From the IMG/VR virus record IMGVR_UViG_3300032116_000004, positions 1-64,000 of that record: DNA of 64,000 nt. One strand, written 5' to 3'. The notes beneath the pieces are model-generated. The model had not been told where the DNA came from. It made no database searches and saw only the letters and a list, made by a program, of their open reading frames with translations. Positions 21,413 to 59,753 of this stretch are shown one piece after another (positions within the stretch are counted from its first letter, which is position 1; the number at the start of each line of letters is the position of its first letter). The position numbers and the translations under genes are program-made.

Positions 21413-21652
21413 ATGTCAGTAGAATTAGCCGCAGAAATTTGGACCGAAGTCAAACGCTATGTCAACTCTGTAGACAGATCTGAAGCCGCAGAAACCTTGG
21501 TCACGGTATTGATTGACAACGACGTCAGCGCCGAAGAAATCAAAAATTCATTCAAGGGCGATGGCGACGTAAAACGTGCCTTGGCAGAATATCTCAAGGA
21601 AGAAGAAGATCTTGGGGAAGATGAAGAAGACGATTACGATGACGAGTATTGA
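21413..21652 (+). CDS. hypothetical acidic protein
   Basis: GGAGG RBS; 79 aa with acidic tail. Confidence 0.75.
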   Translation: MSVELAAEIWTEVKRYVNSVDRSEAAETLVTVLIDNDVSAEEIKNSFKGDGDVKRALAEYLKEEEDLGEDEEDDYDDEY

Positions 21653-22902
21653 TGTCTGCGAAATATTTCCCAATCAAAACTGCCACTGCTTGTCAATTAA
21701 AATGGAATTGGTCTACCCTGTATCTACACGATGAAACTACAGCCAGTTGTCATCGCACAGGTTGGAGTCCTTTGACTGTAGAAAATTTTGACGATTTCCA
21801 TAACACCGAGAAAAAAAAACAAGAGCGTATCGCAATGTTGGACGGCCAATGGCCCAAAGAAAGTTGTGGATACTGTAGAGAAATAGAACAGTCGGGCGGG
21901 TTCAGTGATAGGATGTTGCATCTCAATATTCCTGACCTGGTTCCGCCGGAGTTAGGCCATGATCCAACAGCCATTACAGTATCTCCGACAATATTGGAAG
22001 TTTTTTTTAACAACACTTGCAATCTGGCCTGCCTTTATTGTTTGCCAGAATTGAGCAGTAAACTACATCAGGAAAATGTCAAATTTGGTGACTTCATAGC
22101 TGGACATATCAAACTGACGCCAGCACCTCGCCCACAAAACTATCCAGCACTGTTGGAAAAATTTTGGTCCTGGATGGATAAAAATTCTGGATCCTTGCGT
22201 AGGTTCAATGTGCTAGGAGGGGAACCATTCTATCAGGCTGAGTTTGAGAAATTGTTAGAGTTTTTTGAAAATAATCCACACTCCGATCTTGAATTAGGTA
22301 TAGTGACCAATCTAATGGTTTCTCAAGACAAACTAGATAAATTTGTGAAAATATTCCGTTCTTTGCTGGTAAAGAAACATCTCAAGCGCATTGACATAAC
22401 CTGTAGCATCGACTGCTGGGGACCTGAACAAGAATATGTCCGATATGGAGTTGATTTGGCATCATGGGAAAAAAATTTCCTAACTCTATTGACACACAAG
22501 TGGTTGACCATTAATATCAATCAGACTATATCAGTGCTAACTATCAAGACCATGCCTCAACTGTTGGAAAAACTATCATCGTGGAGGAATCAGCATCCTG
22601 TAGGACATTATTTTTCTGCCATCAGTCCACAACCTGGATATCTCATGCCTCATATAGTTGGAAAAGGAATTTTCCAAGAAGATTTTGATCGCATACTAGA
22701 TCTCATGCCAACAGATACCGAACAGGATCAGACATCCCTCAAATATATGCAAGGAATACGAGATCGAATCGAAAATTCTCAACCAGATCTACAATGTAAA
22801 TCTGATCTCAAATTATTCCTTGATGAAAAAGATCGTCGTAGGGGTAATAGTTGGCGCAAAACATTTCCGTGGCTGGTCAAGGAAATAGATAATGTGGTAT
22901 AG
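21649..22902 (+). CDS. radical SAM protein
   Basis: CNLACLYC (CxxxCxxC), GGEPF, VTNL, SID.W...EYVRYG; extra N-terminal Cys cluster (C..W, SCH, C.YC). Confidence 0.88.
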   Translation: MMSAKYFPIKTATACQLKWNWSTLYLHDETTASCHRTGWSPLTVENFDDFHNTEKKKQERIAMLDGQWPKESCGYCREIEQSGGFSDRMLHLNIPDLVPPELGHDPTAITVSPTILEVFFNNTCNLACLYCLPELSSKLHQENVKFGDFIAGHIKLTPAPRPQNYPALLEKFWSWMDKNSGSLRRFNVLGGEPFYQAEFEKLLEFFENNPHSDLELGIVTNLMVSQDKLDKFVKIFRSLLVKKHLKRIDITCSIDCWGPEQEYVRYGVDLASWEKNFLTLLTHKWLTININQTISVLTIKTMPQLLEKLSSWRNQHPVGHYFSAISPQPGYLMPHIVGKGIFQEDFDRILDLMPTDTEQDQTSLKYMQGIRDRIENSQPDLQCKSDLKLFLDEKDRRRGNSWRKTFPWLVKEIDNVV

Positions 22903-36233: not shown

Positions 36234-36266
36234 AGAGGCACCCTTTAAAAAGGTGCCTCTTTTTTT
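36234..36266 (+). terminator. rho-independent terminator
   Basis: AGAGGCACC...GGTGCCTCT plus T-run. Confidence 0.8.
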
Positions 36267-36285
36267 GACCTCGCTAAGTATTCAC

Positions 36286-37458
36286 ATGGGCAAAGACAAC
36301 AAAATATTTTGCACGGCACCATTTACTACTTTACGAATAGAATCTTATAGTGCCTCAATACCTGGCAAATATGATCAGTATGGAGTGATTTTCAAACCGG
36401 GATGTGTGTATGATCCACAGGGTCCTATATCCAGTCTTGACGAATATCTTCAAGGGCAGGAAATGTCCTGGCACAGAAATAACTTGTTGCAAGGATTGCA
36501 ACCACATCCTGGTTGTCATAGATGTTGGAAATCTGAACAAATTGGTCTAGACAGCACTAGAAAACAGTTGTTGAAAAAACCCTATGCCAGTGACCAGATG
36601 GGTATCAAATTGTTAGATGTTTTTTTTGGCAATGTGTGTAACATGGCCTGTTTTATGTGTGATCCTGAATGGTCCAGCAAACATGCCGAAGAAAGTTACC
36701 AATTGGGATTCATAAAGCAAAGAATCGATGTAAAAGACAACACAGACACAGTGTTGGAAACTATAGATCTGCTACCTGATCTCGAGCAGGTCAGTTTCAT
36801 AGGCGGGGAATTTTTCTTATTCAAAAACAACGTCAAAATTTGCAACAAGATCATTGAAAAAAATCTCGAAGCCAGGATCGTAACCAATGCCAGCGTATTG
36901 ACTGATGAACTTTGGAAAAAGCTTACAGAGATCAAAGCAATTGAAATGCAAATCAGCATAGATGCTATAGAAGAAACCTATGCTCTTATGCGTTACCCTT
37001 ACACCTGGGATACCTTGATCGGCAATTACCAAAAACTGAAACAACTATCAAACATCAAACTCAATTTTCATGTGGTCACACAGGTGCTTAATATTCAAAA
37101 TCTGCATGCCACTTTGGACTGGGCCAATCGAGAACGCACACCAATTTCTTTGCACAATCTATCGCCCGGATGCTGGTCTTGGGACATACTTACCGTTTCT
37201 GAAAAAATCGAACTGAAACAGTATCTACAGGATTGCAATCAAAGATTTAGATTGATATCCAAGCAGACGCAGTGGATACAAGATCTGATTGATGGGTTAG
37301 ACAAGGTTAAATTCAGTCCGCAATGGCGGCAACAGTTTGTGGATAGATTTTCCAAACTTATGAAACATAGGAAAGTTGATATACCGCAAATCCAAAAACA
37401 TTTGGGTATTTTCCGTAGCCTGTTTGACGAGGTCCTAACGGCAATGGATGCACATTAA
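36286..37458 (+). CDS. radical SAM protein
   Basis: FCTAPF, PGC, C.RC, CNMACFMC...WSS, GGEFF, VTNA, SIDA...MRYP; TAAGTA 5 nt before ATG 36286. Confidence 0.85.
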   Translation: MGKDNKIFCTAPFTTLRIESYSASIPGKYDQYGVIFKPGCVYDPQGPISSLDEYLQGQEMSWHRNNLLQGLQPHPGCHRCWKSEQIGLDSTRKQLLKKPYASDQMGIKLLDVFFGNVCNMACFMCDPEWSSKHAEESYQLGFIKQRIDVKDNTDTVLETIDLLPDLEQVSFIGGEFFLFKNNVKICNKIIEKNLEARIVTNASVLTDELWKKLTEIKAIEMQISIDAIEETYALMRYPYTWDTLIGNYQKLKQLSNIKLNFHVVTQVLNIQNLHATLDWANRERTPISLHNLSPGCWSWDILTVSEKIELKQYLQDCNQRFRLISKQTQWIQDLIDGLDKVKFSPQWRQQFVDRFSKLMKHRKVDIPQIQKHLGIFRSLFDEVLTAMDAH

Positions 37459-37465
37459 TCAAATT

Positions 37466-37496
37466 ATTTTGACACACGTCAAAATTAGTGTATAAT
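37466..37496 (+). promoter_or_regulatory. sigma70-like promoter overlapped by an inverted repeat
   Basis: TTGACA(37469)-16-TATAAT(37491); ATTTTGAC-acac-GTCAAAAT palindrome at 37466-37485. Confidence 0.65.
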
Positions 37497-37502
37497 ATCA
37501 CA

Positions 37503-38972
37503 ATGAGAACTGCACGACTAAGCATACGAGATGAAGTCAACGTCAAGATAGAAGGGCTAGAACTGGATGCACGTCGCACTCTAGTCAACAAGTTCAAATA
37601 TGATGTTCCTTACGCCAGATACCTACCAGCGGTAAGATTGGGGCGATGGGATGGCAAGGTCTCCTTTTTCCAACTGGGTGGTAGCACCTACGTAAACCTC
37701 TTGCCTGAAATCATACCAGTGCTGGAAGAATATGGTTACGACATAGAACTGGACGATCAAAGAGAGTATCGCACCACCTTTGAGTTTGAGCAAGTGCAAG
37801 AAGACACTTTCTCTAACATCTCTTGGCCCAAAGGACATCCCAATGCCGGCGAACCTGTCATGATGCGAGACTACCAAGTTGACATAGTCAACAACTTTCT
37901 TGCCAACCCTCAATGCCTGCAAGAAGTGGCCACTGGCGCCGGCAAAACAATCATGACTGCCGCCCTGAGCCATGCTGTGACACCTTATGGTCGTAGCATA
38001 GTGATAGTTCCTAACAAAAGTCTTGTGACACAGACAGAAAAAGACTACATCAACATGGGTCTGGACGTGGGTGTGTTCTTCGGAGACCGCAAAGAGTTTG
38101 GACGCACACACACCATCTGCACATGGCAGAGTCTCAATGTGCTGTTAAAGAACACCAAAAATCAATCAGCAGAAATCACCATTGGTGAATTTATCGAAGG
38201 CGTAGTGTGCGTGATAGTGGACGAGGTGCACATGGCCAAGGCCGATGCACTGAAAACTCTGCTCACAGGCGTGATGGCGCAAGTGCCAATCCGTTGGGGA
38301 TTGACAGGAACCATACCCAAAGAAGATTTTGAATTCCAGGCCTTGCATGTGAGTCTAGGACCAGTGATATCTCGACTGGCCGCCGCTGAACTGCAGGATA
38401 GAGGAGTGCTGGCGCAGTGCCATGTCAACATCGTGCAACTAGTAGACCATGTGGAATACAACAACTATCAAAGCGAACTGAAATATCTTTTAGAGGAATC
38501 AGGGCGGTTGGATACCATGGCCAGTTTGATACGGCAAGTTAACGAAACAGGCAACACTCTCGTGCTGGTAGATCGTATCACAGCCGGACAAGAACTAGTA
38601 AAACGACTGGGCGACCGTGCTGTGTTTGTTTCAGGCGCCACCAAAGCAAAGGACAGACAGGATGAATATGACGAAGTGGCTGAAGCTACCGATAAAATTA
38701 TTGTTGCTACCTATGGCGTGGCTGCTGTTGGTATCAATATTCCTCGTATTTTCAATCTGGTGCTTGTGGAACCCGGAAAGAGCTTTGTCCGAGTTATACA
38801 ATCAATTGGGCGCGGCATTAGAAAAGCTGAGGACAAAGACTTCGTCCAAATCTGGGACATCACCTCCACCTGCCGATTCGCCAAAAGGCACTTGACCAAG
38901 CGCAAACAGTTCTACAAAGAAGCCCGTTATCCTTTCACGCACGAGAAACTGGAGTGGATGACCATTGGGTAA
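37503..38972 (+). CDS. uvsW: UvsW-like SF2 DNA helicase
   Basis: WDGK, RDYQ, ATGAGKT, DEVH, GLTGT, GINIP, QSIGRGIR, H..KR..FY. Confidence 0.92.
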   Translation: MRTARLSIRDEVNVKIEGLELDARRTLVNKFKYDVPYARYLPAVRLGRWDGKVSFFQLGGSTYVNLLPEIIPVLEEYGYDIELDDQREYRTTFEFEQVQEDTFSNISWPKGHPNAGEPVMMRDYQVDIVNNFLANPQCLQEVATGAGKTIMTAALSHAVTPYGRSIVIVPNKSLVTQTEKDYINMGLDVGVFFGDRKEFGRTHTICTWQSLNVLLKNTKNQSAEITIGEFIEGVVCVIVDEVHMAKADALKTLLTGVMAQVPIRWGLTGTIPKEDFEFQALHVSLGPVISRLAAAELQDRGVLAQCHVNIVQLVDHVEYNNYQSELKYLLEESGRLDTMASLIRQVNETGNTLVLVDRITAGQELVKRLGDRAVFVSGATKAKDRQDEYDEVAEATDKIIVATYGVAAVGINIPRIFNLVLVEPGKSFVRVIQSIGRGIRKAEDKDFVQIWDITSTCRFAKRHLTKRKQFYKEARYPFTHEKLEWMTIG

Positions 38973-39570
38973 ACTGTATCAACAAGTGGGAGAACACCTA
39001 TTGGGCAAGTTCTCTGGTGAGGTTATCGTAGAGATTGGGTCGGATAGATGGGAAGGCAGCAGTGCCTATTTCGCAGATCTGGCCCACACACATGACATGA
39101 GATTTGTGTCTGTGGATCTCGATCAAGATGCCAGACATAGATTGCGCAAAACTATCGCTCCGGAGCACAGCCATCTTGCTGAATTTGTGCAAGCCGAAGG
39201 CACCCAATGGACAGCTCAATATTCCGGGTCAAAAATACGGGTGCTGTATCTGGATAACTTCGACTGGGATTGGCGCACTGATAGACAGCAACAAATGATC
39301 CAGGATCAAATCGCTTGGTATAGTCAGCAAGGCTTGATCATGACCAACATCAACTGCCAAACAGCACATGTCACTCAAATGGTCAATCTATTGCCGCATA
39401 TGAGTGATCGATGTGTGATATGTGTTGATGATACCTATGAATACAATGGCGTGTTTATTGGCAAGGGTGGCGCCGTGGTTCCTTATCTTTTGGGGCAAGG
39501 ATTTGGGGTCCTTGTCGCGAGAGATTATGGAGTCATACTCGGTCGCGGATACAGAAATTATATCGTATAA
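38965..39570 (+). CDS. putative SAM-dependent methyltransferase
   Basis: VIVEIGS.R, SVD, LYLD, VDDT, GKG...VPYL. Confidence 0.6.
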   Translation: MGKLYQQVGEHLLGKFSGEVIVEIGSDRWEGSSAYFADLAHTHDMRFVSVDLDQDARHRLRKTIAPEHSHLAEFVQAEGTQWTAQYSGSKIRVLYLDNFDWDWRTDRQQQMIQDQIAWYSQQGLIMTNINCQTAHVTQMVNLLPHMSDRCVICVDDTYEYNGVFIGKGGAVVPYLLGQGFGVLVARDYGVILGRGYRNYIV

Positions 39571-39578
39571 TGGATACT

Positions 39579-40079
39579 ATGAAGATACTCACACTAGACA
39601 ACACAGCCTATGATCTGGATGCGCTACCCGAAGAAGTGGATGACATGCGTTTCGCGATATTAGATAACTCAGATCCCGCAGATCCAGACTATCACTATAT
39701 TCCTCTGATCTTCCTTGAGAGTTTCAACTCACCGGCCTTGGTGCTACAGATCGGATCCCACAGGATCAAAATGCCCATAGACTGGCAAGTGCTGATAGGT
39801 GAGCCCGACTTGGGCGATCTAGAGATGTTGCCGTTGACGTCGATCAATGATCGCGGATTCAAAGTGTTCCAGTTCAATCCACTGACGTCATTCCGCCCCA
39901 GTTTCCTGGACATAGAGATCGTGGATGTCTATCACGACGTGGCATGGTATTGCCCTAAACTAAAAAATGGTCAGATGCTGTGTGTGCCACTCACAGAGGA
40001 TCCAGAACCTGATTGTGTGTATTTTGTCAAGGACATCTCCAGGAACTGTGAGATCGTTGACTACAACAAGGCTTGGTGA
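39579..40079 (+). CDS. hypothetical protein
   Basis: ORF in uvsW operon; TATAAT 7 nt before ATG 39579 (alternative start 39570). Confidence 0.7.
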   Translation: MKILTLDNTAYDLDALPEEVDDMRFAILDNSDPADPDYHYIPLIFLESFNSPALVLQIGSHRIKMPIDWQVLIGEPDLGDLEMLPLTSINDRGFKVFQFNPLTSFRPSFLDIEIVDVYHDVAWYCPKLKNGQMLCVPLTEDPEPDCVYFVKDISRNCEIVDYNKAW

Positions 40080-40519
40080 TGGATAAGTTAAGCATCGGCA
40101 ACGAAATGTCCGAGTTTGATCGTAAAAACAGATCATTCTATGATGAACTCACTGACGAAGAACGCAAGAAGTTTTCAAACTATCTCATGATACGTTGGGG
40201 ATCTGCCATACAAGGCGGTCAGGAATTGCAGGAATACTATGTGCAGAGCACCAATCACTATCTCAACAAAAACTTCTTTGCCATCAATCGTCACCCCAAA
40301 CTACAATGGTTATGTGCCACGGCAGTGAGTCCTGGTCTGGGCACACAACGGCATCAGTGGATCGCTCCCAAGAAGAAAGAAGCCGGCAACAGCGAAGTAA
40401 AGAAAACGTTGACAGACCTCTATCCTAACTGGAAGATGTCTGACATAGAAGTCATGGCCAAGTTGGTCACCAAAAAAGAACTACAAGAGTATCTACGTGA
40501 GCACGGAAACAAAGACTGA
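40079..40519 (+). CDS. putative clamp loader small subunit (gp62-like)
   Basis: F..YLMIRW.S, N..FF, HPKLQW, H.WI..KKK pattern resembles gp62; replication context. Confidence 0.5.
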   Translation: MDKLSIGNEMSEFDRKNRSFYDELTDEERKKFSNYLMIRWGSAIQGGQELQEYYVQSTNHYLNKNFFAINRHPKLQWLCATAVSPGLGTQRHQWIAPKKKEAGNSEVKKTLTDLYPNWKMSDIEVMAKLVTKKELQEYLREHGNKD

Positions 40520-41189
40520 CCACGTCTGTAGATATTGTGAAAAAACTTTTGCCAGGCCCGAGAGCCTGGCTGTGCATGTGTGCGAACAAAAACGCCGTTA
40601 TCAAGATCGAGAGGAGCCCGGTGTGCGGTTGGGGTTACAGGCCTATCTGCGTTTCTACGAAATGACGCAAGGTTCTGCCAAACTCAAAACCTTTGATGAT
40701 TTTGCCAAGAGTCCTTACTATCGAGCCTTTGTAAAGTTTGGCCGTCATTGTGTGGCCATCCGTGCTGTGAACACTGCCAGATTCATTGATTGGGTGGTAG
40801 AGAAAAACAAAAAGATCGATCATTGGTGTAGAGACAGCGTGTATGCAGAATACCTCGCAGAATACATGCGCAAGGAAAGCGTAAATGATGCCTTGGCTCG
40901 GGCCATAGAATATTCTATCGACTGGAGTGAAACCCATGGGCACCCGGCACAGGATTGTTTGAGATATGGCAACAGCAATGCCGTGGCCTATGCTGTGTCC
41001 ACCGGCCGCATCAGTGCTTGGGTATTGTATAACTGCGACAGCGGACAAAAATTGCTGGATGATCTAGACCAAGAGCAGATCGCCATAGTATGGCCTTGGA
41101 TCGATCCTGAATTCTGGCAACGCAAATTCCGCGATTATCCGGCAGATCAAGAGTATGCCCGCGAAATGTTACGACAGGCAGGTTGGTGA
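40497..41189 (+). CDS. hypothetical protein with N-terminal zinc finger
   Basis: CRYCEKTF....SLAVH.C C2HC-type finger. Confidence 0.7.
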   Translation: MSTETKTDHVCRYCEKTFARPESLAVHVCEQKRRYQDREEPGVRLGLQAYLRFYEMTQGSAKLKTFDDFAKSPYYRAFVKFGRHCVAIRAVNTARFIDWVVEKNKKIDHWCRDSVYAEYLAEYMRKESVNDALARAIEYSIDWSETHGHPAQDCLRYGNSNAVAYAVSTGRISAWVLYNCDSGQKLLDDLDQEQIAIVWPWIDPEFWQRKFRDYPADQEYAREMLRQAGW

Positions 41190-41767
41190 TGAGCGCAGAC
41201 ATTGACATAGATTTCGCTGATAGAGAAAAGATCCTGTCGCTGATACAGCACAGATCTGCGAGACAACATGTAGAATCTCAAGTGCGACGACACAACTCCG
41301 GAGTATATGTCACGGATATACCTTGGGATCCTATCAATCAATGTGCGTCCATAGACTATCAAGAAGCCGAATCTAGGGGTTACTTCAAACTGGATTTTTT
41401 AAATATGAGCGTGTATTCTTTGGTCCGGGGCCCGGATCATTACAAAGACATGTTGGATCGATCGCCCCCTTGGACAAAATTATGGACTGATACAGACTGG
41501 GCCAGCCGATTGGTGCATGTGGGCAATTACACTGGCCTGCTCTCAATCATGAGACCCGATTCTATACCCAGGATGGCAGCTTTTATATCTATCATACGCC
41601 CTGGCAAGGCCCATCTACAAAATCTCCCATGGGCCGAAGTGTTTGAGTCAGTGTGGGATGGTGACGACAGCCGTGGTTATACTTTCAAGAAAAGCCATGC
41701 TATCAGTTATGCGGCTTTGGTAGCACTGCACATGAACTTAATCGATCCTGCGAACCAGGGTGATTGA
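41189..41767 (+). CDS. miniature DNA polymerase III alpha (DnaE)-like protein
   Basis: ADIDIDF, RHNSGV, KLDFLN, IIRPG, GYTFKKSHAISYA in DnaE order within 192 aa. Confidence 0.75.
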   Translation: MSADIDIDFADREKILSLIQHRSARQHVESQVRRHNSGVYVTDIPWDPINQCASIDYQEAESRGYFKLDFLNMSVYSLVRGPDHYKDMLDRSPPWTKLWTDTDWASRLVHVGNYTGLLSIMRPDSIPRMAAFISIIRPGKAHLQNLPWAEVFESVWDGDDSRGYTFKKSHAISYAALVALHMNLIDPANQGD

Positions 41768-42115
41768 TTTGCGTTTGGATTTTTTGCGGGCTATGTCGGT
41801 GAGGCTGGTGCATGGTCCATGCACTATTTCCAGATCTTTGTTGGTAAATGTCCTGAGATAAGGGCGGAATACTTCCCAATCTTGCTTGAGGAATATATTG
41901 ATAGGTATGCTACGATTGCTTTCCCACCACCAAGTATTGGCCAATTCTAAGAACAGTTTCTTGAGATCTGCGTGGGGAATATTGCCAAAATCATAGATGG
42001 TGGTCACAGCATCATCGCGGTTCTGTATCACACCGATGTATTCATTGCCAGCATAGGTGCAAAATGTTATGAAAGGGTAGCGTTCGGCTATTTTAGCGAA
42101 GATTTCAGAGCCCAT
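41738..42115 (-). CDS. hypothetical protein
   Basis: YPF, EYIGVIQN, WWWESNR.IPINIFL, basic C-terminus; TATAAATA on minus strand at 42155-42162. Confidence 0.75.
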   Translation of the reverse strand: MGSEIFAKIAERYPFITFCTYAGNEYIGVIQNRDDAVTTIYDFGNIPHADLKKLFLELANTWWWESNRSIPINIFLKQDWEVFRPYLRTFTNKDLEIVHGPCTSLTDIARKKSKRKSITLVRRID

Positions 42116-42136: not shown

Positions 42137-43135
42137 ATGTATTCAACCACTGCCTATTTATATCAACAGCGACAGCAGGTCATTTTGATCGACACCAGTG
42201 GTGCCTATTTTGACCGGAGGTGGCAACCCGTGTATGCTAAAAATTTAAAAATCCATCGTGGCGTAGACAACGTCATACTGTTTGAATTCGTCAATCAAGA
42301 TCAGAAACCCGTGAACATCACTGGGTCTACCATCACTTTCCGATTGATCTCGACCAATGGTGATATACTTTTGTTGAGCAAAGACCTAGAAATACTCAGT
42401 GCCGCTTACGGCCGGGCCAAGGTCACTCTGCTCAGCACCGATCTAGACGAAGTTGATGCACAGCCCGTGGGCTGGAGCCTTGAACGTAACTCAGCCACCA
42501 GCGAACTCTACGAGCCTGTGTTTACCAATGCCTACTCCGGCGGCCGCGGCACAGCCGATGTAGTAGATTCAGTGTATCCTGCATTTGTGCCCAGTGAGAT
42601 AATGACTGTTCCTACCAACCCGGAAATCAGCCAGAGCAATCCCAATCGCAATCATACATCTGCGGTGTATACACAAGGTCGCGATCTTGTAACCTTCCAG
42701 ATGGACTTTGACAATTTCTCGGGCAACGTCAAGGCGCAGGGTTCCAGCACACAATTGGGGCCATGGTATGATGTTGGCAGCCAGCGACAGTATATCAACA
42801 GGACAGCACGTGATTATTGGAACGTAGAAGGATACCACAATTATCTCCGTTTCGAAGTAAATCAATATGGCTACAAGGCCAAAATTGGCAATGCAGTGGT
42901 CAGTGGTGGCACCGTGACCAATGTTACCATGAACAATTCTGGTAGTCAGTGGATTTCCACGCCATTCCCTAATGTAGACTTTGTGGGCGAAGGCACAGGT
43001 GCTGAAGGATATGCCGTGGCCACTGCAGGTGGCAATGTCAATGCTGTGATAGTCACAGCCGGTGGCGCAGGATACGTCAATAATCCCAATGCCAAAATCA
43101 ACAACGGATTCATTACATCCATCGCCTATAGATGA
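42137..43135 (+). CDS. putative structural/baseplate-associated protein
   Basis: TAAATA at 42115; LKIHRGVDN...F.F.NQDQKPV Ig-like N-terminus; C-terminal V..GG.GY repeats. Confidence 0.55.
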   Translation: MYSTTAYLYQQRQQVILIDTSGAYFDRRWQPVYAKNLKIHRGVDNVILFEFVNQDQKPVNITGSTITFRLISTNGDILLLSKDLEILSAAYGRAKVTLLSTDLDEVDAQPVGWSLERNSATSELYEPVFTNAYSGGRGTADVVDSVYPAFVPSEIMTVPTNPEISQSNPNRNHTSAVYTQGRDLVTFQMDFDNFSGNVKAQGSSTQLGPWYDVGSQRQYINRTARDYWNVEGYHNYLRFEVNQYGYKAKIGNAVVSGGTVTNVTMNNSGSQWISTPFPNVDFVGEGTGAEGYAVATAGGNVNAVIVTAGGAGYVNNPNAKINNGFITSIAYR

Positions 43136-43872
43136 AGATTAGGAAGTTAGTGGCATTTGGCTGTAGTTGGACCTATGGCGATGAACTCATCGCTCCTGAA
43201 TTCCGAGACTTGTCTGAAGAAGCATTCCGAGATCACTACGATCAAAATCGTCCTTACAGGCTGGCCAATGGCTTTGCGGGTCGTATTGCCAAAGAATTTG
43301 ATCTTGAACTAGACAACATGGCTTTTCCGGGATCCAGCCTTGAAAGCATGCGCTGGAACTTCATGTGGTATCTGCGCAACGGTCAGAGCACCGACGATGT
43401 TCTGTTTATCGTGGCACACACTGATAGCACACGGCAAAGCTGGTTTAACCCACAGCATCAAATTAGCATGAAGGATCCGCAATGGAATCGACACATGCAC
43501 GGAACTTGGTTGCTCCAACCCAACCCCGACATAGATGACAACTGGTTCTCTTTGCAACGATTATGGCTGGGCATGAGTTATCATAGAGAATGGGCAGAAT
43601 ACAATTTCCAAACATCCATCAATCTATTTGATCAGGCCGAGAGCAGGTATGGCATTCCGATAATACAGGTCAGCGCATTGCCCAATCCTTATTCTCTACG
43701 AGTGCCCAGTCTGATCTATCCAGGACTGAGTTTCAAAGAAATATTATACAACAAAAAGAAAGAATTGGGCATAGAACCGTTTGCTCGCGGCGGACATCCC
43801 AATGAATTGGGTCATAAAATCATTGCAGACCACTTGATCGAACACATAAAACATAGTAAAATGTTAGAGTGA
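43132..43872 (+). CDS. SGNH/GDSL hydrolase-like protein
   Basis: AFGCSWTYG, N.A.PG.S, GHPNELGH..IA. Confidence 0.7.
   Translation: MKIRKLVAFGCSWTYGDELIAPEFRDLSEEAFRDHYDQNRPYRLANGFAGRIAKEFDLELDNMAFPGSSLESMRWNFMWYLRNGQSTDDVLFIVAHTDSTRQSWFNPQHQISMKDPQWNRHMHGTWLLQPNPDIDDNWFSLQRLWLGMSYHREWAEYNFQTSINLFDQAESRYGIPIIQVSALPNPYSLRVPSLIYPGLSFKEILYNKKKELGIEPFARGGHPNELGHKIIADHLIEHIKHSKMLE
43834..43862 (+). promoter_or_regulatory. sigma70-like promoter for primase, inside upstream gene
   Basis: TTGATC-17-TAAAAT, 6 nt before GTG 43869. Confidence 0.5.
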
Positions 43873-44858
43873 TCGACATATTTTCTTATCTACCAGCCAA
43901 ACGCAAAAGCACAAGTTCTGGCTGGATTTCATTCAATGCTCCGTGTTGTGTTCACAATGGTGAAAGCCAGGATCGACGACAGCGCGGTGGAATCAAGGCC
44001 ACTGACCAAGGTTGGAGTTTCCACTGTTTCAATTGCGGATTCACTGCCAGCTTCATCCTGGGTCGCAATCTTTCATTCAAGGCTCGCAGACTGTTGCAAT
44101 GGCTTAATGTTCCACAACAAGAAATAGAATATATAAATCTCGAAAGCCTCAAACATCGAAACATCCAAGGCATACTGGATGATCGACAGCGCACTGCCAA
44201 TGTGGTGCAGGGCATCGAGTTTGAAGATCGAGAACTGCCGGAAGAATTCGCATTGGTGGATCGCGACATGTCAGTGCATTGGCAGTATCTCAGAGATCGT
44301 TGTGTGCCCGAGGATTATCCCATAGGTATGATCCATGGCCGGCCTGATGACAAATTCAGTCGTAGGCAAGGTGTGATCATACCGTTTACCTATGATGGAC
44401 GCATAGTAGGACACACACGTAGATTTTTTGATGATCATAATCCTCGCTACGTCCACGACATGCAACAGGGCTATGTGTTTGGCACAGATCTACAGCGACC
44501 AGATTGGCAGCATGTGATCGTGGTGGAAGGCATATTTGATGCTCTCAGCATCGGTGGATTGGCAGTATTGCATGCTGAAATCAATGATACCCAAGCGAGA
44601 CTGATACGCAGTATTGGTCGAGAAGTCACAGTGGTGCCCGATCAAGACAAGGCCGGTCTCAAGTTGATAGATTGTGCTATAGAACTGGGTTGGGCAGTGA
44701 GCATACCAGACTGGCCAGCGGATGTCAAGGACGTTAACGATGCAGTGATACGCCAAGGACGATTGGCCACGCTGTTGAATATTTTCCAGCATCGATGCAC
44801 CAGTAAAATAAAAATTGAAATGGCTCGGAAGAATCTCATGAGGAAACTCCATGTCTAG
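43869..44858 (+). CDS. DNA primase (gp61-like, zinc finger plus TOPRIM)
   Basis: N-terminal CC..HCFNC zinc domain, IIPF, VVEGIFDA, PDQDKAG, KDVND. Confidence 0.88.
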   Translation: MIDIFSYLPAKRKSTSSGWISFNAPCCVHNGESQDRRQRGGIKATDQGWSFHCFNCGFTASFILGRNLSFKARRLLQWLNVPQQEIEYINLESLKHRNIQGILDDRQRTANVVQGIEFEDRELPEEFALVDRDMSVHWQYLRDRCVPEDYPIGMIHGRPDDKFSRRQGVIIPFTYDGRIVGHTRRFFDDHNPRYVHDMQQGYVFGTDLQRPDWQHVIVVEGIFDALSIGGLAVLHAEINDTQARLIRSIGREVTVVPDQDKAGLKLIDCAIELGWAVSIPDWPADVKDVNDAVIRQGRLATLLNIFQHRCTSKIKIEMARKNLMRKLHV

Positions 44859-45558
44859 ATTGATCGTGTATGGCGACAGTTATAGCACACCAGGATTCTG
44901 TGTAGATGTCAAGGATTCTTGGTGGGGCTTAATGGCTGCTGCCTTGCAAGTTGATAGTGTAGAAAACTACAGTTGGCCAGGAAACAACGTAGATAGCATA
45001 TCACATCTCATAGTGGCTGGTTCTGGATTTAGTCCTAACGATTATGTAATAGTGGGTGTGCCCCCTATCGAGAGATTTACTGTGTATGATTATGATGGTA
45101 TGGCTCCTAGTTATCATAGATTTTTTGGCAATCTAGAACCCATAGATCAACCATGCTTACGAGAACATGATGGGCTCAGGCAAGTCACTACTCATCAGCT
45201 GGGCCAAGGCTATGTAATGTCATGGAATCGTAGTTGGCAAGAAGCACAGGCTCTTAGAGAATTATTTTTATTGACTAGATATATCCAAGGATGGACTAGC
45301 AATTATCTCATCGTGAATCTCGCCGAACCATTCCAGCCCAAGACCGAGTGGCCAACACTGGCCAGTATACAGAGAAGATTTTTAGCAGATCCGCACAGTA
45401 TCCTGTTTGAAGATACCTACTTCAGCACTAACAAAAATGTCCATCGTCCCGTGGACTTTGATACTCACGGATGGCACGGTCACTATGGATCTGCGGGCAA
45501 TCATCATTGGTATGAAAAAGTATTGTGTCCTCGCATGCAGGAGTTAGGATGGCTATGA
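44851..45558 (+). CDS. SGNH/GDSL hydrolase-like protein
   Basis: VYGDSYS, NYSWPGNN, R near IVG, GHYG..GN. Confidence 0.6.
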   Translation: MSRLIVYGDSYSTPGFCVDVKDSWWGLMAAALQVDSVENYSWPGNNVDSISHLIVAGSGFSPNDYVIVGVPPIERFTVYDYDGMAPSYHRFFGNLEPIDQPCLREHDGLRQVTTHQLGQGYVMSWNRSWQEAQALRELFLLTRYIQGWTSNYLIVNLAEPFQPKTEWPTLASIQRRFLADPHSILFEDTYFSTNKNVHRPVDFDTHGWHGHYGSAGNHHWYEKVLCPRMQELGWL

Positions 45559-46244
45559 ATTATTTTGGCGGCTGTAGCATCACCATGGGTGCAGGTTTCG
45601 AGAGCCAACAAAATGATCCCAGGATCTATCCCAATCTCATTGGCCATGCAGACAACGATGCCGAAGGTGGATCCAGCAATCTAAAAATTTTTACCCGAGC
45701 AGCCAAGGCTTTATTGGATCGTCGACATGATCGATATTTTGTGCAATGGAGTGCTTTGCACAGACACTGGGTTTACCCCAGCGCCAACCAGGGATTTTAT
45801 ATCGGTGCCGACACTGATAGCAATCTAATAGATAAAAAGTTTGTGGCCCAATATCAATTGCTTAATCACGATTATAGTAATATAATGTCATTGATAGACT
45901 ATACCAGGATACTGCAACAGATGTCCGATGATGCTGGAAAAGATATATGGTTTATCAATGGCATGATTCCTTGGACCCAAGACATGTTGACCAATCAATC
46001 TCACAGTGACTATGCCAAGACCTTATATCAAGATCTAGATGATGATCAAACTCGAGATTTCAGTGAACGGTTGCGCAATAATCTTGAATTGATAGACTGG
46101 ACACAATGGGTAAACCCGTGGCACAGCATCGTGGATCTCAAACTGGACCATGCACCGTTGGATGATCATCCGGGCGCTGCCACGCATAGAAAAATCGCTG
46201 ACATGATACAACAACACATAGATACATCGAGAGAAACCCAATGA
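45555..46244 (+). CDS. SGNH/GDSL hydrolase-like protein
   Basis: GGCSITMG, GGSSN, VQWS...R, D.HPG..TH..IA. Confidence 0.65.
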   Translation: MNYFGGCSITMGAGFESQQNDPRIYPNLIGHADNDAEGGSSNLKIFTRAAKALLDRRHDRYFVQWSALHRHWVYPSANQGFYIGADTDSNLIDKKFVAQYQLLNHDYSNIMSLIDYTRILQQMSDDAGKDIWFINGMIPWTQDMLTNQSHSDYAKTLYQDLDDDQTRDFSERLRNNLELIDWTQWVNPWHSIVDLKLDHAPLDDHPGAATHRKIADMIQQHIDTSRETQ

Positions 46245-47638
46245 AAGATTATTCCGTAGAAGTCCAAAAGTTGTTCCTGGAGTTTATGATGCAGGACGCA
46301 CAGAGTTACGTGCGAGTGCAGAACATATTCAATGAAGAAAACTTTGATCGCAGCCTGCGTAGTGCCGCGAAGTTTATCCGAGAACACTGTGATCAACACA
46401 AAACTTTGCCTGATCGCAAACAGGTTCGAGCAGTGACCAATGTTGACCTACAAGAAATACCCGATATCAATGAAGGGCATCTCGACTGGTTCATGGAAGA
46501 GTTTGAATCATTCACTCGTCGACAAGAATTGGAACGTGCGATCCTTAAGTCGGCGGACCTTTTGGAAAAGGGCAATTTTGATCCTGTGGAGAAGTTGATT
46601 AAGGATGCCGTGCAAATATCATTGACCAAGGATCTGGGCACAGATTACTTTGAAGATCCGCGATCGAGACTGCTGGCCTTGAAAAATAATAATGGACAGA
46701 ACTCTACTGGATGGCCTGCCCTGGACAAATTGCTGTATGGTGGATTCAACCGAGGTGAATTGCAGATTTTCGCAGGAGGTTCAGGTTCTGGCAAGAGTTT
46801 GTTCATGCAGAACTTGGCAGTGAACTGGGCACAGGCCGGGCTCAACGGTTGTTACATCACGCTGGAACTGTCAGAAGGTCTTTGTTCCATGCGCATCGAC
46901 TCCATGATGACCAATACGTCTAGCAAAGAAATTTTTCGAGATATCGATACAGTGGAAATGAAAGTCAAGATGATGCAGAAGAAGGCCGGCGCCTTGCAGA
47001 TCAAATACATGCCAGCACAGAGCACAGTGAATGATATCCGTGCATATCTCAAAGAACTGCAAGTGAAGACAAAGAAACGTGTGGATTTTTTATGCGTAGA
47101 TTATCTAGACTTGATCATGCCGGTGAGTGCCAAAGTTAGCCCCAATGATTTATTCGTCAAAGACAAGTATGTTTCAGAAGAACTGCGCAACTTGGCTAAA
47201 GAACTCAATGTATTGTTTGTCACTGCTTCGCAGTTGAATCGTGCGGCAGTGGAAGAGATTGAGTTCGATCATAGCCATATATCGGGTGGTATTTCCAAGA
47301 TCAACACAGCAGATAATGTGTTTGGTATCTTCACAAGTCGAGCCATGCGTGAACGTGGTCGCTATCAGATACAGTTGATGAAGACTCGTTCATCGAGTGG
47401 AGTGGGACAGAAGGTAGATTTAGAGTTTGACATTGAAAGCCTGCGTATCAGAGATTTAGGCGAAGACCAACAGCAAAGTTCTGGATTTGTCAAGAAACCC
47501 AACATCTACGAATCAATCAAGGCCAAGTCTACTATGAAGGATGACAACAGTGAACCAGCTGAAGATGTTGGCAAGGTCACAGCCGATGTGCAATCAAACA
47601 AACTCAAACAGTTATTAGGACAAATCAAACAGTCATGA
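46241..47638 (+). CDS. replicative DNA helicase (DnaB/gp41-like)
   Basis: STGW..LD..LYGG, AGGSGSGKS, ITLELSE, VDYLDL, ASQLNR, KTR. Confidence 0.93.
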   Translation: MKDYSVEVQKLFLEFMMQDAQSYVRVQNIFNEENFDRSLRSAAKFIREHCDQHKTLPDRKQVRAVTNVDLQEIPDINEGHLDWFMEEFESFTRRQELERAILKSADLLEKGNFDPVEKLIKDAVQISLTKDLGTDYFEDPRSRLLALKNNNGQNSTGWPALDKLLYGGFNRGELQIFAGGSGSGKSLFMQNLAVNWAQAGLNGCYITLELSEGLCSMRIDSMMTNTSSKEIFRDIDTVEMKVKMMQKKAGALQIKYMPAQSTVNDIRAYLKELQVKTKKRVDFLCVDYLDLIMPVSAKVSPNDLFVKDKYVSEELRNLAKELNVLFVTASQLNRAAVEEIEFDHSHISGGISKINTADNVFGIFTSRAMRERGRYQIQLMKTRSSSGVGQKVDLEFDIESLRIRDLGEDQQQSSGFVKKPNIYESIKAKSTMKDDNSEPAEDVGKVTADVQSNKLKQLLGQIKQS

Positions 47639-58142: not shown

Positions 58143-59753
58143 ATGGCAATAGTTCAGATATCGCGTATCACGCAACGCAAAGGTCTAAGTGAAAATCTAC
58201 CGCAACTAGCGGGCGCAGAGTTTGGCTGGGTCATCGACCAGCGCAGATTGTTCATCGGCAATGGCACCATACAAGAAGGTGCTCCTGCCATTGGCAACAC
58301 TGAAATCCTCACCCAATATTCTGACATATTCGCCATAGCTGGAGCCTACACCTACAAAGGTGAAGCCGGTGGATACACTGTGCAGACCGGCCCCACACCA
58401 GGTGACCCCATCGAGCGCACACTGCAATCCAAACTGGATGACATGGCATCGATCAAAGATTTTGGTGCCACGGGCGACGGAGACAGCGACGACACTGATG
58501 CTATCAACCGTGCCCTGTTCCAGATGTTCTGCCGCGAACAGAATCCACAGGTGAGACGTAGCATATTCTTCCCTGCTGGTGTGTATCGTGTGACTTCCAC
58601 CATAAAGATCCCCCCGTTCTGTAAATTATACGGCGAAGGTGCCCGCAGTTCGGTCATATTCTTGGACACCACTGGTGACAGCACGTTGACTGCTACTTAT
58701 GTGGCCCAGACCGCAGACAGTCTACAGCAGGTCTATCCCAACATCGGCAACAACAATGCCACTGCACCTACCAACATAGAAATCTATGACATGGGCTTCC
58801 AGTCCGCAGAAACACTCAACATAGTGTCGATCCAGGAAGCCACCAATGTGTTGTTCCAAGACGTGGCATTCATTGGACCATTGGTGCAGGCCGAACTTGA
58901 CACCGATGTAGACGACATCTCAGGTGCCACATTCGGATCCACGACAACTTATCCCACAGAGAATATTTCGTTCACGGCCTGCGAATTTTCAGGACTGACC
59001 TATGGTTTATCCAGCGATGCTGCCATCTCTGGTATCACTGTCACTGACAGCAAATTCAACACGCTGTATCAAGGTGTGCTGTTGACAGGAACTGGTGCTG
59101 GTACTGCGGGCTATATAGGACCGCAGGGTTTCCGCATCACACAGAACTTGTTCGACGCTATCTATGCCGAAGGCATCGAGATCGATGGTGCGCAAAACAA
59201 CATGTCTGGATTCAACATGTTCCTGGACGTGGCCACCAAATTCCGTGGCGGCGCCTATCCTGCCGCCGACAATTTCAACGTCATACTGATCGACACAGAC
59301 AACAATGTAAGTTTTGGCGATATGTTTGAGCGTGATTCTTCAGCAGATGAATTAAAAGCACGTATCAATATCGACAACAAAAAAGTCTTTGCCATGGAAG
59401 CCGGCGAGAGATATCGCTTTGGCACCTTGGTACAAGAAGCTGGTGTGCTGGTAGACAAAACTGTTGGTAGTGGCACCTTGTTGACATTGCCTGCCGCGCT
59501 GGGTTCAGCATTTGAAGTGCGATACAATTTCAAAGATCTAGTAACCACTCAGGTCCGTTACGGCACCTTGGTCATTGTATCTGAAGACATAGATGACAGT
59601 TCTACTTTTCCTGTGTCTTTCACTGATGACTATACTGAAAATGGTCCTGTCGGACTCACGCTTTCTGTGAGCCAGGTAGGTTCTGACATCGAAGTCTCTT
59701 ACACCATCACGGCCAATGGCCGTTTCCGATACGCTGTTAGCACTCTAGGATAA
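58143..59753 (+). CDS. tail fibre/spike-like protein with pectate lyase-like beta-helix
   Basis: RI.QRKG...LPQLA.AEFGW N-terminus; SIKDFGATGDG.SDDTDAINRA, FFPAGVYRVT; TAAATA at 58120. Confidence 0.7.
   Translation: MAIVQISRITQRKGLSENLPQLAGAEFGWVIDQRRLFIGNGTIQEGAPAIGNTEILTQYSDIFAIAGAYTYKGEAGGYTVQTGPTPGDPIERTLQSKLDDMASIKDFGATGDGDSDDTDAINRALFQMFCREQNPQVRRSIFFPAGVYRVTSTIKIPPFCKLYGEGARSSVIFLDTTGDSTLTATYVAQTADSLQQVYPNIGNNNATAPTNIEIYDMGFQSAETLNIVSIQEATNVLFQDVAFIGPLVQAELDTDVDDISGATFGSTTTYPTENISFTACEFSGLTYGLSSDAAISGITVTDSKFNTLYQGVLLTGTGAGTAGYIGPQGFRITQNLFDAIYAEGIEIDGAQNNMSGFNMFLDVATKFRGGAYPAADNFNVILIDTDNNVSFGDMFERDSSADELKARINIDNKKVFAMEAGERYRFGTLVQEAGVLVDKTVGSGTLLTLPAALGSAFEVRYNFKDLVTTQVRYGTLVIVSEDIDDSSTFPVSFTDDYTENGPVGLTLSVSQVGSDIEVSYTITANGRFRYAVSTLG

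What the first reader, a model, noticed from the sequence alone, without database searches (positions are those of the whole stretch)
41189..41767. Miniature C-family (DnaE-like) polymerase domain in a T4-like phage
Seen: a 192-aa ORF with ADIDIDF, RHNSGV, KLDFL, RPG and GYTFKKSHAISYA, in this order. Established: these correspond to the DnaE palm motifs PDIDIDF (two catalytic Asp), HAAG and KFDFLG (third Asp), and the finger motifs RPG and Y.FNKSHA..YA. In a DnaE of about 1100 aa these span several hundred residues. Here the PHP, most of the thumb, the clamp-binding and the OB domains are absent, yet all three acidic residues remain. The gene is stop/start-coupled (TGATG) at the end of the uvsW / gp62-like / zinc-finger operon, so it does not look like a decayed fragment. 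Inference: a minimal nucleotidyltransferase or one subunit of a split polymerase, perhaps completed by the neighbouring 39579, 40079 or 40497 products. It could act in priming, repair or handling of modified nucleotides.
Basis: partly seen in the sequence, partly recalled or inferred. Interest (0 to 1): 0.8.

Follow-up and report, generated by a model that had tools for sequence, protein, structure and literature searches.

The report
Half of a split mini DNA polymerase
This 192-residue phage gene is a real, conserved piece of a bacterial-type (Pol III alpha) DNA polymerase, but it is only the second half of a two-gene miniature enzyme that was already described by sequence analysis in giant phages in 2021 and has never been tested at the bench.

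Summary
The ORF at 41189-41767 exists as described, and all five motifs are present in the stated order. Sequence profiles and a confident AlphaFold model (pLDDT 96) match only C-family polymerases. The 192 residues span E. coli Pol III alpha 399-781. D4/D6 correspond to D401/D403 and K67/D69 to K553/D555, and all four are invariant in 78 diverse homologues. The gene is intact in 111 environmental copies and under purifying selection (omega about 0.1).

It is not a stand-alone domain. It is the C-terminal unit of the "minimal, split DNA polymerase III alpha" that Iyer et al. (2021) described in group 2.2 jumbo phages (PHROG 11778). The missing N-terminal palm, with the GRGS NTP-binding loop (E. 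coli 264-392, Pfam PF07733), is a separate protein of about 173 aa. That gene lies next to the clamp-loader gene and is not in this window.

A 353-kb relative carries both halves. A natural 375-aa fusion of the two halves models as a DnaE core (Z 20.7).

The window comes from an uncultured freshwater jumbo phage. Verdict: correct observation, largely correct inference, known family. Polymerase activity is untested.

The parts
41189..41767 (+). C-terminal unit of the split minimal Pol III alpha (192 aa). It holds the palm strands with the metal-binding Asp residues and a reduced 'middle finger'.
   Evidence: PHROG 11778 'DNA polymerase', E 4e-52, full length. AF2 pLDDT 96.4. Only Pol III alpha among the structural and profile hits.
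41198..41212 (+). DIDID: D4 and D6 correspond to E. coli D401 and D403 (catalytic); D8 corresponds to D405.
   Evidence: D4 and D6 are invariant and D8 at least 90% conserved in 78 homologues. E. coli numbering was checked. The structural alignment starts at E. coli 399.
41387..41395 (+). K67-L-D69 corresponds to E. coli K553-F-D555 (third catalytic Asp).
   Evidence: K67 and D69 are invariant. HMM alignment to E. coli 539-641.
41597..41605 (+). R137-P138-G139 corresponds to E. coli R639-P640-G641 (finger motif).
   Evidence: P138 is invariant and R137 at least 90% conserved. HMM alignment.
41684..41713 (+). F166-KKSHAISY-A175 corresponds to E. coli F756-NKSHSAAY-A765.
   Evidence: HMM alignment to E. 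coli 739-769. PHROG 405 (1190-aa DnaE-type) residues 775-809, E 6e-5.
41187..41191 (+). TGATG stop/start overlap with the upstream gene.
   Evidence: Read directly from the sequence. The same coupling occurs at 40077-40081 (TGATG) and 39568-39572 (TAATG).
37469..37496 (+). Perfect sigma-70 consensus promoter (TTGACA-16-TATAAT) ahead of uvsW. It is the likely start of the operon that ends with the C-unit.
   Evidence: It is the only such site in 64 kb, against 0.01 expected. Function is inferred.
37488..38972 (+). UvsW-type helicase, first gene of the conserved block.
   Evidence: About 50% identical to the UvsW-like genes of Atu_ph07, MIJ3 and 121Q, in the same position.
39570..40079 (+). Conserved 169-aa ORF of unknown function (phrog_11279).
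   Evidence: Homologous and collinear in Atu_ph07, MIJ3 and 121Q. No family name.
40079..40519 (+). Conserved ORF of about 146 aa, unknown function (phrog_11758).
40497..41189 (+). 230-aa phage-specific protein with an N-terminal C2H2 zinc finger (phrog_11058). It is translationally coupled to the C-unit and is not the N-terminal polymerase unit.
41738..42115 (-). Conserved convergent 125-aa ORF (phrog_11637) that overlaps the 3' end of the C-unit gene by 30 nt.
   Evidence: Homologous and in the same place in Atu_ph07, MIJ3 and 121Q, and weakly after the fused gene on L422.
43869..44858 (+). Toprim primase, part of the same conserved replication block.
   Evidence: Pfam Toprim, marginal: Toprim_2 22.9 bits against a cut-off of 22.1, Toprim_3 below its cut-off. 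Homologous to the primases of Atu_ph07, MIJ3 and 121Q.
46241..47638 (+). DnaB/gp41-type replicative helicase, end of the conserved block.
   Evidence: Pfam DnaB_C 3.7e-21. 38-55% identical to the phage homologues.

Best explanation
The gene encodes the C-terminal subunit of a two-piece, miniature C-family (Pol III alpha-type) nucleotidyltransferase that is specific to group 2.2 jumbo phages. This subunit supplies the palm beta-strands carrying the three metal-binding Asp residues (D4, D6, D69, plus K67). A short beta-hairpin stands where the thumb is in DnaE. It also supplies a cut-down helical finger with the RPG and FKKSHA..YA motifs. A second protein of about 173 aa, encoded elsewhere in the genome next to a GroES-like gene and the clamp-loader gene, supplies the first half of the palm, including the helix and GVGRGS loop that hold the incoming nucleotide's triphosphate. 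The two chains meet exactly at the point where DnaE runs from ...FERFL (392) to PDFDVDF (400-406). Shown: homology, fold, residue conservation, purifying selection, co-occurrence of the two halves, and a natural fusion. Inferred: that the two chains associate non-covalently into one active site; that the enzyme copies DNA; and that it works beside the phage's B-family replicase in replication or recombination-linked repair. The last point rests on gene position: this gene ends an operon that starts with uvsW and is followed by the primase and helicase genes.
For: Family membership: PHROG 11778, E 4e-52. Homologues of about 190 aa occur in 96 cultured jumbo phages and in more than 7900 metagenome clusters of 186-204 aa.

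Fold: AF2 pLDDT 96.4. Only Pol III alpha among the hits. The model spans E. coli 399-781.

Catalytic residues D4, D6, K67 and D69 are invariant.

Selection: 111 of 111 environmental copies are intact at 183-209 aa. dN/dS is 0.10 against a 92%-identical copy, and dS is saturated in most other comparisons.

Partner: Atu_ph07 gp316 and its relatives end in ...GVGRGS..SSY.LY..G.H...S..Y.LD..EFL and match PF07733. They map to E. coli 264-392.

Co-occurrence: the genus counts in cultured phages are nearly the same for the two halves. Both halves lie on IMGVR_UViG_3300023184_000024, a 353-kb relative whose RNR small subunit is 79% identical to the window's.

Fusion: P0209 (375 aa) is the N-unit plus the C-unit, collinear with DnaE. 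PF07733 and TIGR00594 hits run across the junction. Its model gives Z 20.7, 19.8 and 17.2 to Mtb DnaE1, Taq Pol III alpha and PolC, against 9.3 for the C-unit alone.

Prior description: Iyer et al. 2021, PMC7824862.

Synteny: the block uvsW, three ORFs, C-unit, reverse ORF, primase, helicase is conserved in Atu_ph07, MIJ3 and 121Q. Among the N-unit loci fetched (143 by HMM), tblastn finds the GroES-like gene in 143 held loci and the clamp loader in 115.
Against: The N-unit of this particular genome was not seen. It is absent from the 64-kb window, and I could not reach the rest of the genome.

No biochemical, structural or genetic study of either half was found.

The enzyme lacks the thumb, index finger (E. 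coli 642-738, which holds R709/R710), HhH, clamp-binding and OB parts, so it is unclear how it would hold a primer-template.

E. coli R390 aligns with Glu/Asp in the N-units.

The fusion rests on one 2.4-kb contig.

The fused model was built from a shallow 17-row alignment with no inter-domain covariation.
Confidence: 0.8

Rival explanations
1. The 192-aa protein works alone as a minimal nucleotidyltransferase, for example in priming, terminal transfer or handling of modified nucleotides.
For: It models confidently as a compact single chain and keeps all three acidic residues.
Against: It begins three residues before the first catalytic Asp. It therefore lacks the helix and G[GS] loop that Pol-beta-type nucleotidyltransferases and DnaE use to bind the triphosphate; this rests on established knowledge and on the mapping. 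A dedicated partner family that carries exactly that element co-occurs with it, and the two are found fused.
Confidence: 0.06
2. The missing part of the enzyme is supplied by the adjacent, translationally coupled products (169-aa, about 146-aa or 230-aa zinc-finger ORFs) rather than by a distant gene.
For: TGATG coupling. The three ORFs keep their order beside the C-unit in phages as distant as Atu_ph07, MIJ3 and 121Q.
Against: None of them resembles the N-terminal palm: N-unit HMM E of 18 or more, and no Pfam, NCBIfam or atlas lead. XacN1 keeps the C-unit without these neighbours. They could still be extra accessory subunits, such as DNA-binding ones, which was not testable here.
Confidence: 0.05
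3. The heterodimer is catalytically active but is not a DNA polymerase in replication. It could be a repair or translesion enzyme, a short-patch primer extender, or a non-templated nucleotidyltransferase.
For: The phage group already has a B-family replicase (Iyer et al.; Atu_ph07 annotation). The thumb, clamp-binding and most DNA-binding parts are missing. The gene sits with uvsW, a recombination and repair helicase.
Against: DnaE-specific finger motifs are retained, and both halves are linked to replisome genes: primase and helicase, and the clamp loader.
Confidence: 0.25
4. The ORF is a decayed fragment of a full-length dnaE, or an inactive structural remnant.
For: Its small size. It is invisible to Pfam and NCBIfam.
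Against: Homologues have a constant length of about 190 aa across 355 clusters at 50% identity, and none of the best 150 is a full-length DnaE. All copies examined are intact and dN/dS is about 0.1. The catalytic residues are invariant.
Confidence: 0.01

Closest known systems
Minimal split DNA polymerase III alpha of group 2.2 jumbo phages (Iyer, Anantharaman, Krishnan, Burroughs & Aravind 2021, Viruses 13:63). The C-terminal unit is PHROG 11778, for example 121Q gene 16, MIJ3_00061 and the Atu_ph07 ORF at 58304-58864.
   Same: Same family (E 4e-52), length, motifs and start at the DxD strand. Same gene neighbourhood: uvsW ... C-unit, reverse ORF, primase, helicase. The partner N-unit is encoded far away.
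   Different: Only 32-42% identical to any cultured phage's copy. It comes from an uncultured, abundant freshwater lineage. An extra methyltransferase-like gene follows uvsW. The N-unit of this genome itself was not seen.
Bacterial Pol III alpha (DnaE; E. coli 2HNH, Taq 2HPI/3E0D, M. tuberculosis 5LEW) and PolC (3F2B)
   Same: Pol-beta-like palm with the same three Asp and Lys. The RPG and F.KSH..YA finger motifs. The order of elements is collinear.
   Different: 192 aa plus about 173 aa on two chains, against about 1160 aa on one chain. There is no PHP domain. The thumb (433-510) is replaced by a hairpin. The index finger (642-738), ring and little fingers with HhH, the clamp-binding motif, the OB fold and the tau-binding tail are absent. 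R390 is not conserved.
PHP-less phage 'DnaE-like DNA polymerase III alpha' (about 560-650 aa; many Streptomyces, Mycobacterium and Pseudomonas phages). A 566-aa example lies in contigs related to this window (L316, L332, L338, L361).
   Same: Phage-borne C-family catalytic core without a PHP domain.
   Different: Those are single chains with full PF07733 and PF17657 hits, and they keep a thumb and larger fingers. The window protein is half of a smaller, split version. The window itself lacks the 566-aa gene.
Split-intein DnaE of cyanobacteria (established knowledge; not tested here)
   Same: A C-family polymerase encoded by two distant genes.
   Different: There the break lies far downstream in the protein, and the halves are joined by protein trans-splicing. 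Here the N-units end a few residues after the FL motif and the C-unit starts three residues before the DxD, which leaves no room for intein halves. No splicing is expected.

Membership tests
Split minimal Pol III alpha, C-terminal unit (Iyer et al. 2021; PHROG 11778) | Full-length sequence match to the family profile | tested here: met
   phrog_11778, E 4.2e-52, residues 3-185 on profile 7-191 of 197. 96 jumbo-phage records by tblastn.
Split minimal Pol III alpha, C-terminal unit (Iyer et al. 2021; PHROG 11778) | Stand-alone ORF of about 190 aa that begins at the DxD strand and carries the Mg-binding and template-binding parts | tested here: met
   192 aa, starting MSADIDIDF. Homologues are 183-216 aa.
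Split minimal Pol III alpha, C-terminal unit (Iyer et al. 2021; PHROG 11778) | A separate N-terminal NTP-binding unit (GRGS, PF07733) encoded elsewhere in the same genome | tested here: inconclusive
   Absent from the 64-kb window. The rest of the genome was not available. Both units are present on a 353-kb relative and in all cultured phage groups that hold the C-unit.
Split minimal Pol III alpha, C-terminal unit (Iyer et al. 2021; PHROG 11778) | Host genome is a group 2.2 jumbo phage (UvsW, gp41-type helicase, T4-type terminase, B-family polymerase) | tested here: inconclusive
   UvsW, primase, DnaB-type helicase, T4-type terminase and sheath are in the window, with synteny to 121Q, MIJ3 and Atu_ph07. 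Relatives are contigs of 343-353 kb. No B-family polymerase is in the window. The largest window ORFs scanned give no polymerase family hit.
C-family DNA polymerase (DnaE/PolC) | Pol-beta-like palm with three catalytic carboxylates and the conserved Lys | tested here: met
   D4, D6, D69 and K67 correspond to E. coli D401, D403, D555 and K553, and are invariant.
C-family DNA polymerase (DnaE/PolC) | G-S triphosphate-binding loop (E. coli R362-G363-S364) on the same polypeptide | tested here: not met
   The ORF starts at the equivalent of E. coli 399. The loop is on the separate N-unit family.
C-family DNA polymerase (DnaE/PolC) | N-terminal PHP domain | tested here: not met
   No PHP match in Pfam or NCBIfam. 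The structural alignment starts at E. coli 399.
C-family DNA polymerase (DnaE/PolC) | Thumb, complete fingers (PF17657), HhH, clamp-binding motif and OB fold | tested here: not met
   192 residues cover E. coli 399-781, with 433-510 and 642-738 deleted, and nothing beyond 781. No PF17657 hit.
C-family DNA polymerase (DnaE/PolC) | Template-directed DNA synthesis | not testable with these tools
   No experimental report was found.

The most novel reading that the evidence does not exclude
The two-piece core is only the centre of a larger phage-specific polymerase. In this reading the conserved operon partners stand in for the lost thumb, DNA-binding and clamp-binding modules. These partners are the coupled C2H2 zinc-finger protein, the 169-aa and about 146-aa proteins, and the convergent 125-aa ORF. 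The clamp-loader-linked N-unit neighbours may play a similar part. The result would be a modular second replicase, for example a lagging-strand or recombination-primed extender working beside the B-family enzyme. It would also be a living model of a pre-fusion C-family polymerase.
Probability: 0.15. Interest if true: 0.75.

Novelty: new member of a known kind. Interest (0 to 1): 0.4.

Why it matters
If the two small chains really form an active enzyme, together about 365 residues, it would be the smallest known C-family polymerase core. It would also be a natural experiment in how much of Pol III alpha is needed for catalysis. The family is very abundant in freshwater and other metagenomes: thousands of 90% clusters for each half. 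It sits inside the replication modules of jumbo phages that already have a B-family polymerase. Its role therefore bears on how giant phages organise replication and repair, and on ideas about the ancestry of bacterial replicases raised by Iyer et al. 2021. For genome annotation, the C-unit is invisible to Pfam and NCBIfam and is often labelled 'hypothetical' or even 'membrane protein', so correct naming has practical value. None of this is a new discovery from this window. The open question is experimental.

Tried and rejected
1. Pfam, NCBIfam and single-sequence PDB searches of the ORF found nothing. Only PHROGs, family profiles and structure searches see the homology.

2. I looked for the N-unit inside the window with a GRGS motif scan, tblastn with Atu_ph07 gp316, and an N-unit HMM against all 797 reading frames. 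All were negative.

3. I tried to find the N-unit of the window's own genome or closest contigs, using IMG/VR scans with the N-unit alignment, the L104 N-unit, a 'typical' lineage N-unit (P0373), and a walk from the RNR gene. The lists are cut at 80 loci or 600 rows, and no contig was shared with the C-unit lists. A targeted walk on contig 3300023184_000024 did find the 3' part of a C-unit.

5. A deep alignment for the fused protein failed, because MAFFT overlays the N- and C-units when many rows are given (A3 and A4 are wrong). Only a 17-row alignment (A5) was correct, and that one was used.

6. Intein-mediated joining was rejected because there is no room for intein halves.

7. I searched the window for PolB, a DnaQ-like exonuclease, a clamp loader and a GroES-like gene, using the Atu_ph07, 121Q, XacN1 and MIJ3 proteins. 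Nothing was found.

8. For RNA evidence, no metatranscriptome run was listed as holding the gene.

9. The PA5oct omics paper holds nothing on these genes.
Full report
**The observation.** The window holds an ORF from ATG 41189 to TGA 41767 on the + strand, 192 codons. It reads MSADIDIDF ... RRHNSGVYV ... FKLDFLN ... IIRPGK ... Its start codon overlaps the stop of the upstream 230-aa gene in TGATG. The same kind of coupling (TAATG, TGATG) joins the genes further upstream.

**Is the DnaE resemblance real?** Pfam, NCBIfam and a single-sequence search of PDB sequences find nothing. This explains why many database copies are called 'hypothetical' or even 'membrane protein'. Other methods do see the homology:
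- PHROGs places the protein full-length in phrog_11778, 'DNA polymerase' (E 4e-52). It also gives a weak C-terminal match to a 1190-aa DnaE-type family.
- An exhaustive search of 1.8 billion representatives gave 355 clusters, almost all 180-216 aa.
- I aligned 78 of them (A2). D4, D6, K67, D69 and P138 are invariant. D8, H35, G38, R137, K167 and H170 are at least 90% conserved.
- A profile of A2 hits only Pol III alpha among 177,635 PDB sequences (E 7e-6 to 1e-4; the next hit is at 0.8).
- With A2, AlphaFold2 gives a model with pLDDT 96.4 and pTM 0.89.
- In Foldseek the first 13 hits are all Pol III alpha from Thermus, Mycobacterium and E. coli. Probability is 1.00 for the first 8 and 0.69-0.92 for the next five, and everything after is below 0.05.
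- VIA-align gives Z 9.3-8.2, with 182-190 of the 192 residues aligned to Taq 460-838 and E. coli 399-781.

With the E. coli dnaE sequence in hand, the correspondences are:

| Window protein | E. coli Pol III alpha |
|---|---|
| D4, D6, D8 | D401, D403, D405 |
| K67, D69 | K553, D555 |
| R137-P138-G139 | R639-P640-G641 |
| F166 to A175 | F756 to A765 |

The thumb (433-510) is replaced by a beta-hairpin. About 90 residues of the index finger (642-738) are missing, and nothing lies beyond residue 781.

**Not a decayed fragment.** I extracted 111 environmental copies from fetched loci. All are intact at 183-209 aa. Against a 92%-identical copy, dN is 0.049 and dS is 0.51 (omega 0.10). Against most more distant copies dS is saturated.

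**What it is.** The family has been described. [quoted passage not shown] The window ORF is the C-terminal unit.

I identified the N-terminal unit from Atu_ph07 gp316, which that phage's paper calls a Pol III alpha subunit. It is 177 aa and ends ...GVGRGSCVSSYILYIIGVHKVNSIKYDLDFSEFLE. Its relatives are 170-199 aa and carry PF07733. The family profile maps to E. coli 264-392, ending at FERFL. The two families thus cover adjacent, non-overlapping segments of DnaE. The break falls between L392 and the PDFDVDF strand. The window protein starts three residues before its first catalytic Asp, so it lacks the helix and GS loop that bind the incoming triphosphate. That makes a stand-alone enzyme unlikely.

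**Evidence that the halves belong together.**
1. Co-occurrence. The C-unit is in 96 cultured phage records and the short N-unit is in the same groups, with nearly the same genus counts: Escherichia 34/34, Pseudomonas 11/11, Erwinia 8/8, Xanthomonas 4/4, Yersinia 4/4. The distance between the two genes is 15 kb in XacN1, 31 kb in 121Q, 43.5 kb in MIJ3 and 182 kb in Atu_ph07.
2. A natural fusion. P0209 (375 aa) reads ...GVGRGSSSASLLLFLLKIHLIDPIKYKLNIKEFIKDNKEGIYNIADFDIDT..., which is the N-unit plus the C-unit in DnaE order. PF07733 and TIGR00594 matches run across the junction. It sits on a 2.4-kb, 25% GC contig and is followed by the same kind of convergent small ORF as the C-unit in MIJ3 and 121Q.
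3. Structure of the fusion. A model of the fusion (pLDDT 86, pTM 0.83) matches only C-family polymerases (Foldseek E down to 5.6e-8). Z is 20.7 to M. tuberculosis DnaE1, 19.8 to Taq, 17.2 to PolC and 13.7-14.9 to E. coli, over 317-350 residues. The C-unit alone gives 9.3.

**This phage.** The window has no close cultured relative: the C-unit is below 60% identical to every phage record. The gene block is homologous and collinear with Atu_ph07, MIJ3 (PA5oct-like) and 121Q (Rak2-like), at 25-55% identity. The block runs uvsW, 169-aa ORF, about 146-aa ORF, 230-aa zinc-finger ORF, C-unit, reverse 125-aa ORF, structural ORF, primase, DnaB-type helicase. The window also holds a sheath gene, a T4-type terminase and a class I RNR. 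IMG/VR contig 3300031963_000041 (104 kb) is identical over the helicase and the C-unit. Related contigs reach 343-353 kb. At least 12 freshwater or lake metagenome runs hold the stretch almost word for word. It is an uncultured freshwater jumbo phage of group 2.2.

**Where is its N-unit?** It is not in the window. A GRGS scan, tblastn and an N-unit HMM against all 797 reading frames give nothing (best E 3.4). In 121Q, MIJ3 and Atu_ph07 the N-unit lies beside a GroES-like gene and the clamp-loader gene. Among the N-unit loci fetched (143 by HMM), tblastn finds that GroES-like gene in 143 held loci and the clamp loader in 115. None of those genes is in the window.

I could not reach the rest of this genome. 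A 352,754-bp relative (IMGVR_UViG_3300023184_000024; RNR small subunit 79% identical, with the same C-unit-to-RNR spacing of about 20 kb) carries an N-unit at about 36.7 kb and a C-unit ending at about 293.8 kb. The N-unit family is as abundant in metagenomes as the C-unit family; both searches saturate at 8000 candidates. I therefore expect the partner gene to lie outside the window. That is an inference.

**Expression context.** The only perfect sigma-70 consensus promoter in the 64 kb (0.01 expected by chance) sits at 37469-37496, directly ahead of uvsW. The genes from there to the C-unit are all on the + strand and overlap or abut. The next gene converges on them. This looks like one early operon read by the host polymerase, ending with the C-unit. 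That too is inferred. No RNA run holding the gene was listed.

**Mechanism.**
- Shown: the fold, the catalytic residues, selection, the partner family, the fusion and the synteny.
- Inferred: the two chains assemble non-covalently into one Pol-beta-type active site. The N-unit positions the nucleotide triphosphate. The C-unit binds the two metal ions and contributes the residual finger. The enzyme adds nucleotides to a DNA primer.

Its role is probably auxiliary to the B-family replicase that this phage group carries (Iyer et al.; Atu_ph07 annotation). Possible roles are short-patch or recombination-linked synthesis, or one strand of the fork. How it holds DNA without a thumb, HhH or clamp-binding parts is unexplained. 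The conserved coupled neighbours, especially the zinc-finger protein, are candidates for accessory roles, but nothing here tests that.

**Novelty and score.** The family and the split-enzyme idea are published. This is a new member from an abundant uncultured lineage. I found no biochemical or genetic test of the family in the paper library. The finding is correct and worth annotating, but it is not a discovery. Interest is 0.4, held up mainly by the fact that activity, partners and role remain entirely untested.

Noticed in passing
window 37469-37496 (+): The only perfect sigma-70 consensus promoter (TTGACA-16 nt-TATAAT) in the 64-kb window, against 0.01 expected by chance. It lies immediately upstream of uvsW. 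The listed GTG start at 37488 falls inside the -10 box, so the real uvsW start is probably the ATG five codons further on.
   Followed up: partly
L316:8871-10607 (-), L332:12408-14111 (-), L361:4050-5792 (-), L338:11396-12907 (-): Four contigs related to the window carry an additional unsplit 566-aa DnaE-like polymerase without a PHP domain (PF07733 6.7e-41, PF17657 2.7e-14). It lies downstream of the helicase on the opposite strand, and three of the four (L316, L332, L338) also showed a split C-unit on the fetched stretch. It belongs to the widespread phage 'DnaE-like' group (1243 phage records). The window lacks it.
   Followed up: partly
L422:1066-2193 (protein P0209): A natural single-chain fusion of the N- and C-units (375 aa) on a 2.4-kb, 25% GC metagenome contig. 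It is the only fused form among the best 150 representatives.
   Followed up: yes
L226 (121Q), L227 (MIJ3), L002 (Atu_ph07), L083-L222: The N-terminal unit is almost always followed by a small conserved ORF, a GroES-like gene and the gp44/RFC-type clamp-loader gene. Across the loci held, tblastn found these in 125, 143 and 115 loci respectively; the HMM had found an N-unit in 143 loci.
   Followed up: partly
L223:805-1623 (121Q gene 9) and L227:562-1335 (MIJ3 exoX): 121Q gene 9, annotated 'DNA polymerase III', sits just upstream of uvsW. It is 30% identical over 266 aa (E 3e-32) to the MIJ3 gene annotated exoX (Exodeoxyribonuclease 10), which lies near that phage's N-unit. XacN1 has an annotated epsilon-like gene 2.3 kb from its C-unit. 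No such gene is in the window. A possible proofreading partner was not examined.
   Followed up: no
window 38965-39570 (+): A methyltransferase-like ORF (Methyltransf_24, E 6e-5, just below the Pfam cut-off) is inserted between uvsW and the conserved 169-aa gene. The cultured relatives have no homologue at that place.
   Followed up: no
window 21649-22902 (+) and 36253-37458 (+): Two radical-SAM-domain ORFs (Pfam Radical_SAM 1.2e-5, below the cut-off, and 9.1e-15, above it). The second lies directly upstream of the uvsW promoter.
   Followed up: no
window 43132-43872, 44851-45558, 45525-46244 (+): Three ORFs of about 240 aa around the primase gene begin with G(C/D)S-type motifs (FGCSWTYGDE, YGDSYSTPG, GGCSITMG) that recall SGNH/GDSL hydrolases. 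None has a Pfam hit, and only a weak C-terminal similarity links the first and third.
   Followed up: partly
window 1091-4384 (+): An unusually long (1097 aa) tail-sheath protein; only its last 100 residues match the sheath C-terminal domain.
   Followed up: no
IMG/VR samples 3300023184 and 3300028392: In two samples the C-unit and the N-unit were found on different large contigs with adjacent numbers: 000025 (345 kb) and 000024 (353 kb), and 000034 (149 kb) and 000036 (143 kb). In the second sample the two contigs may be pieces of one genome.
   Followed up: no
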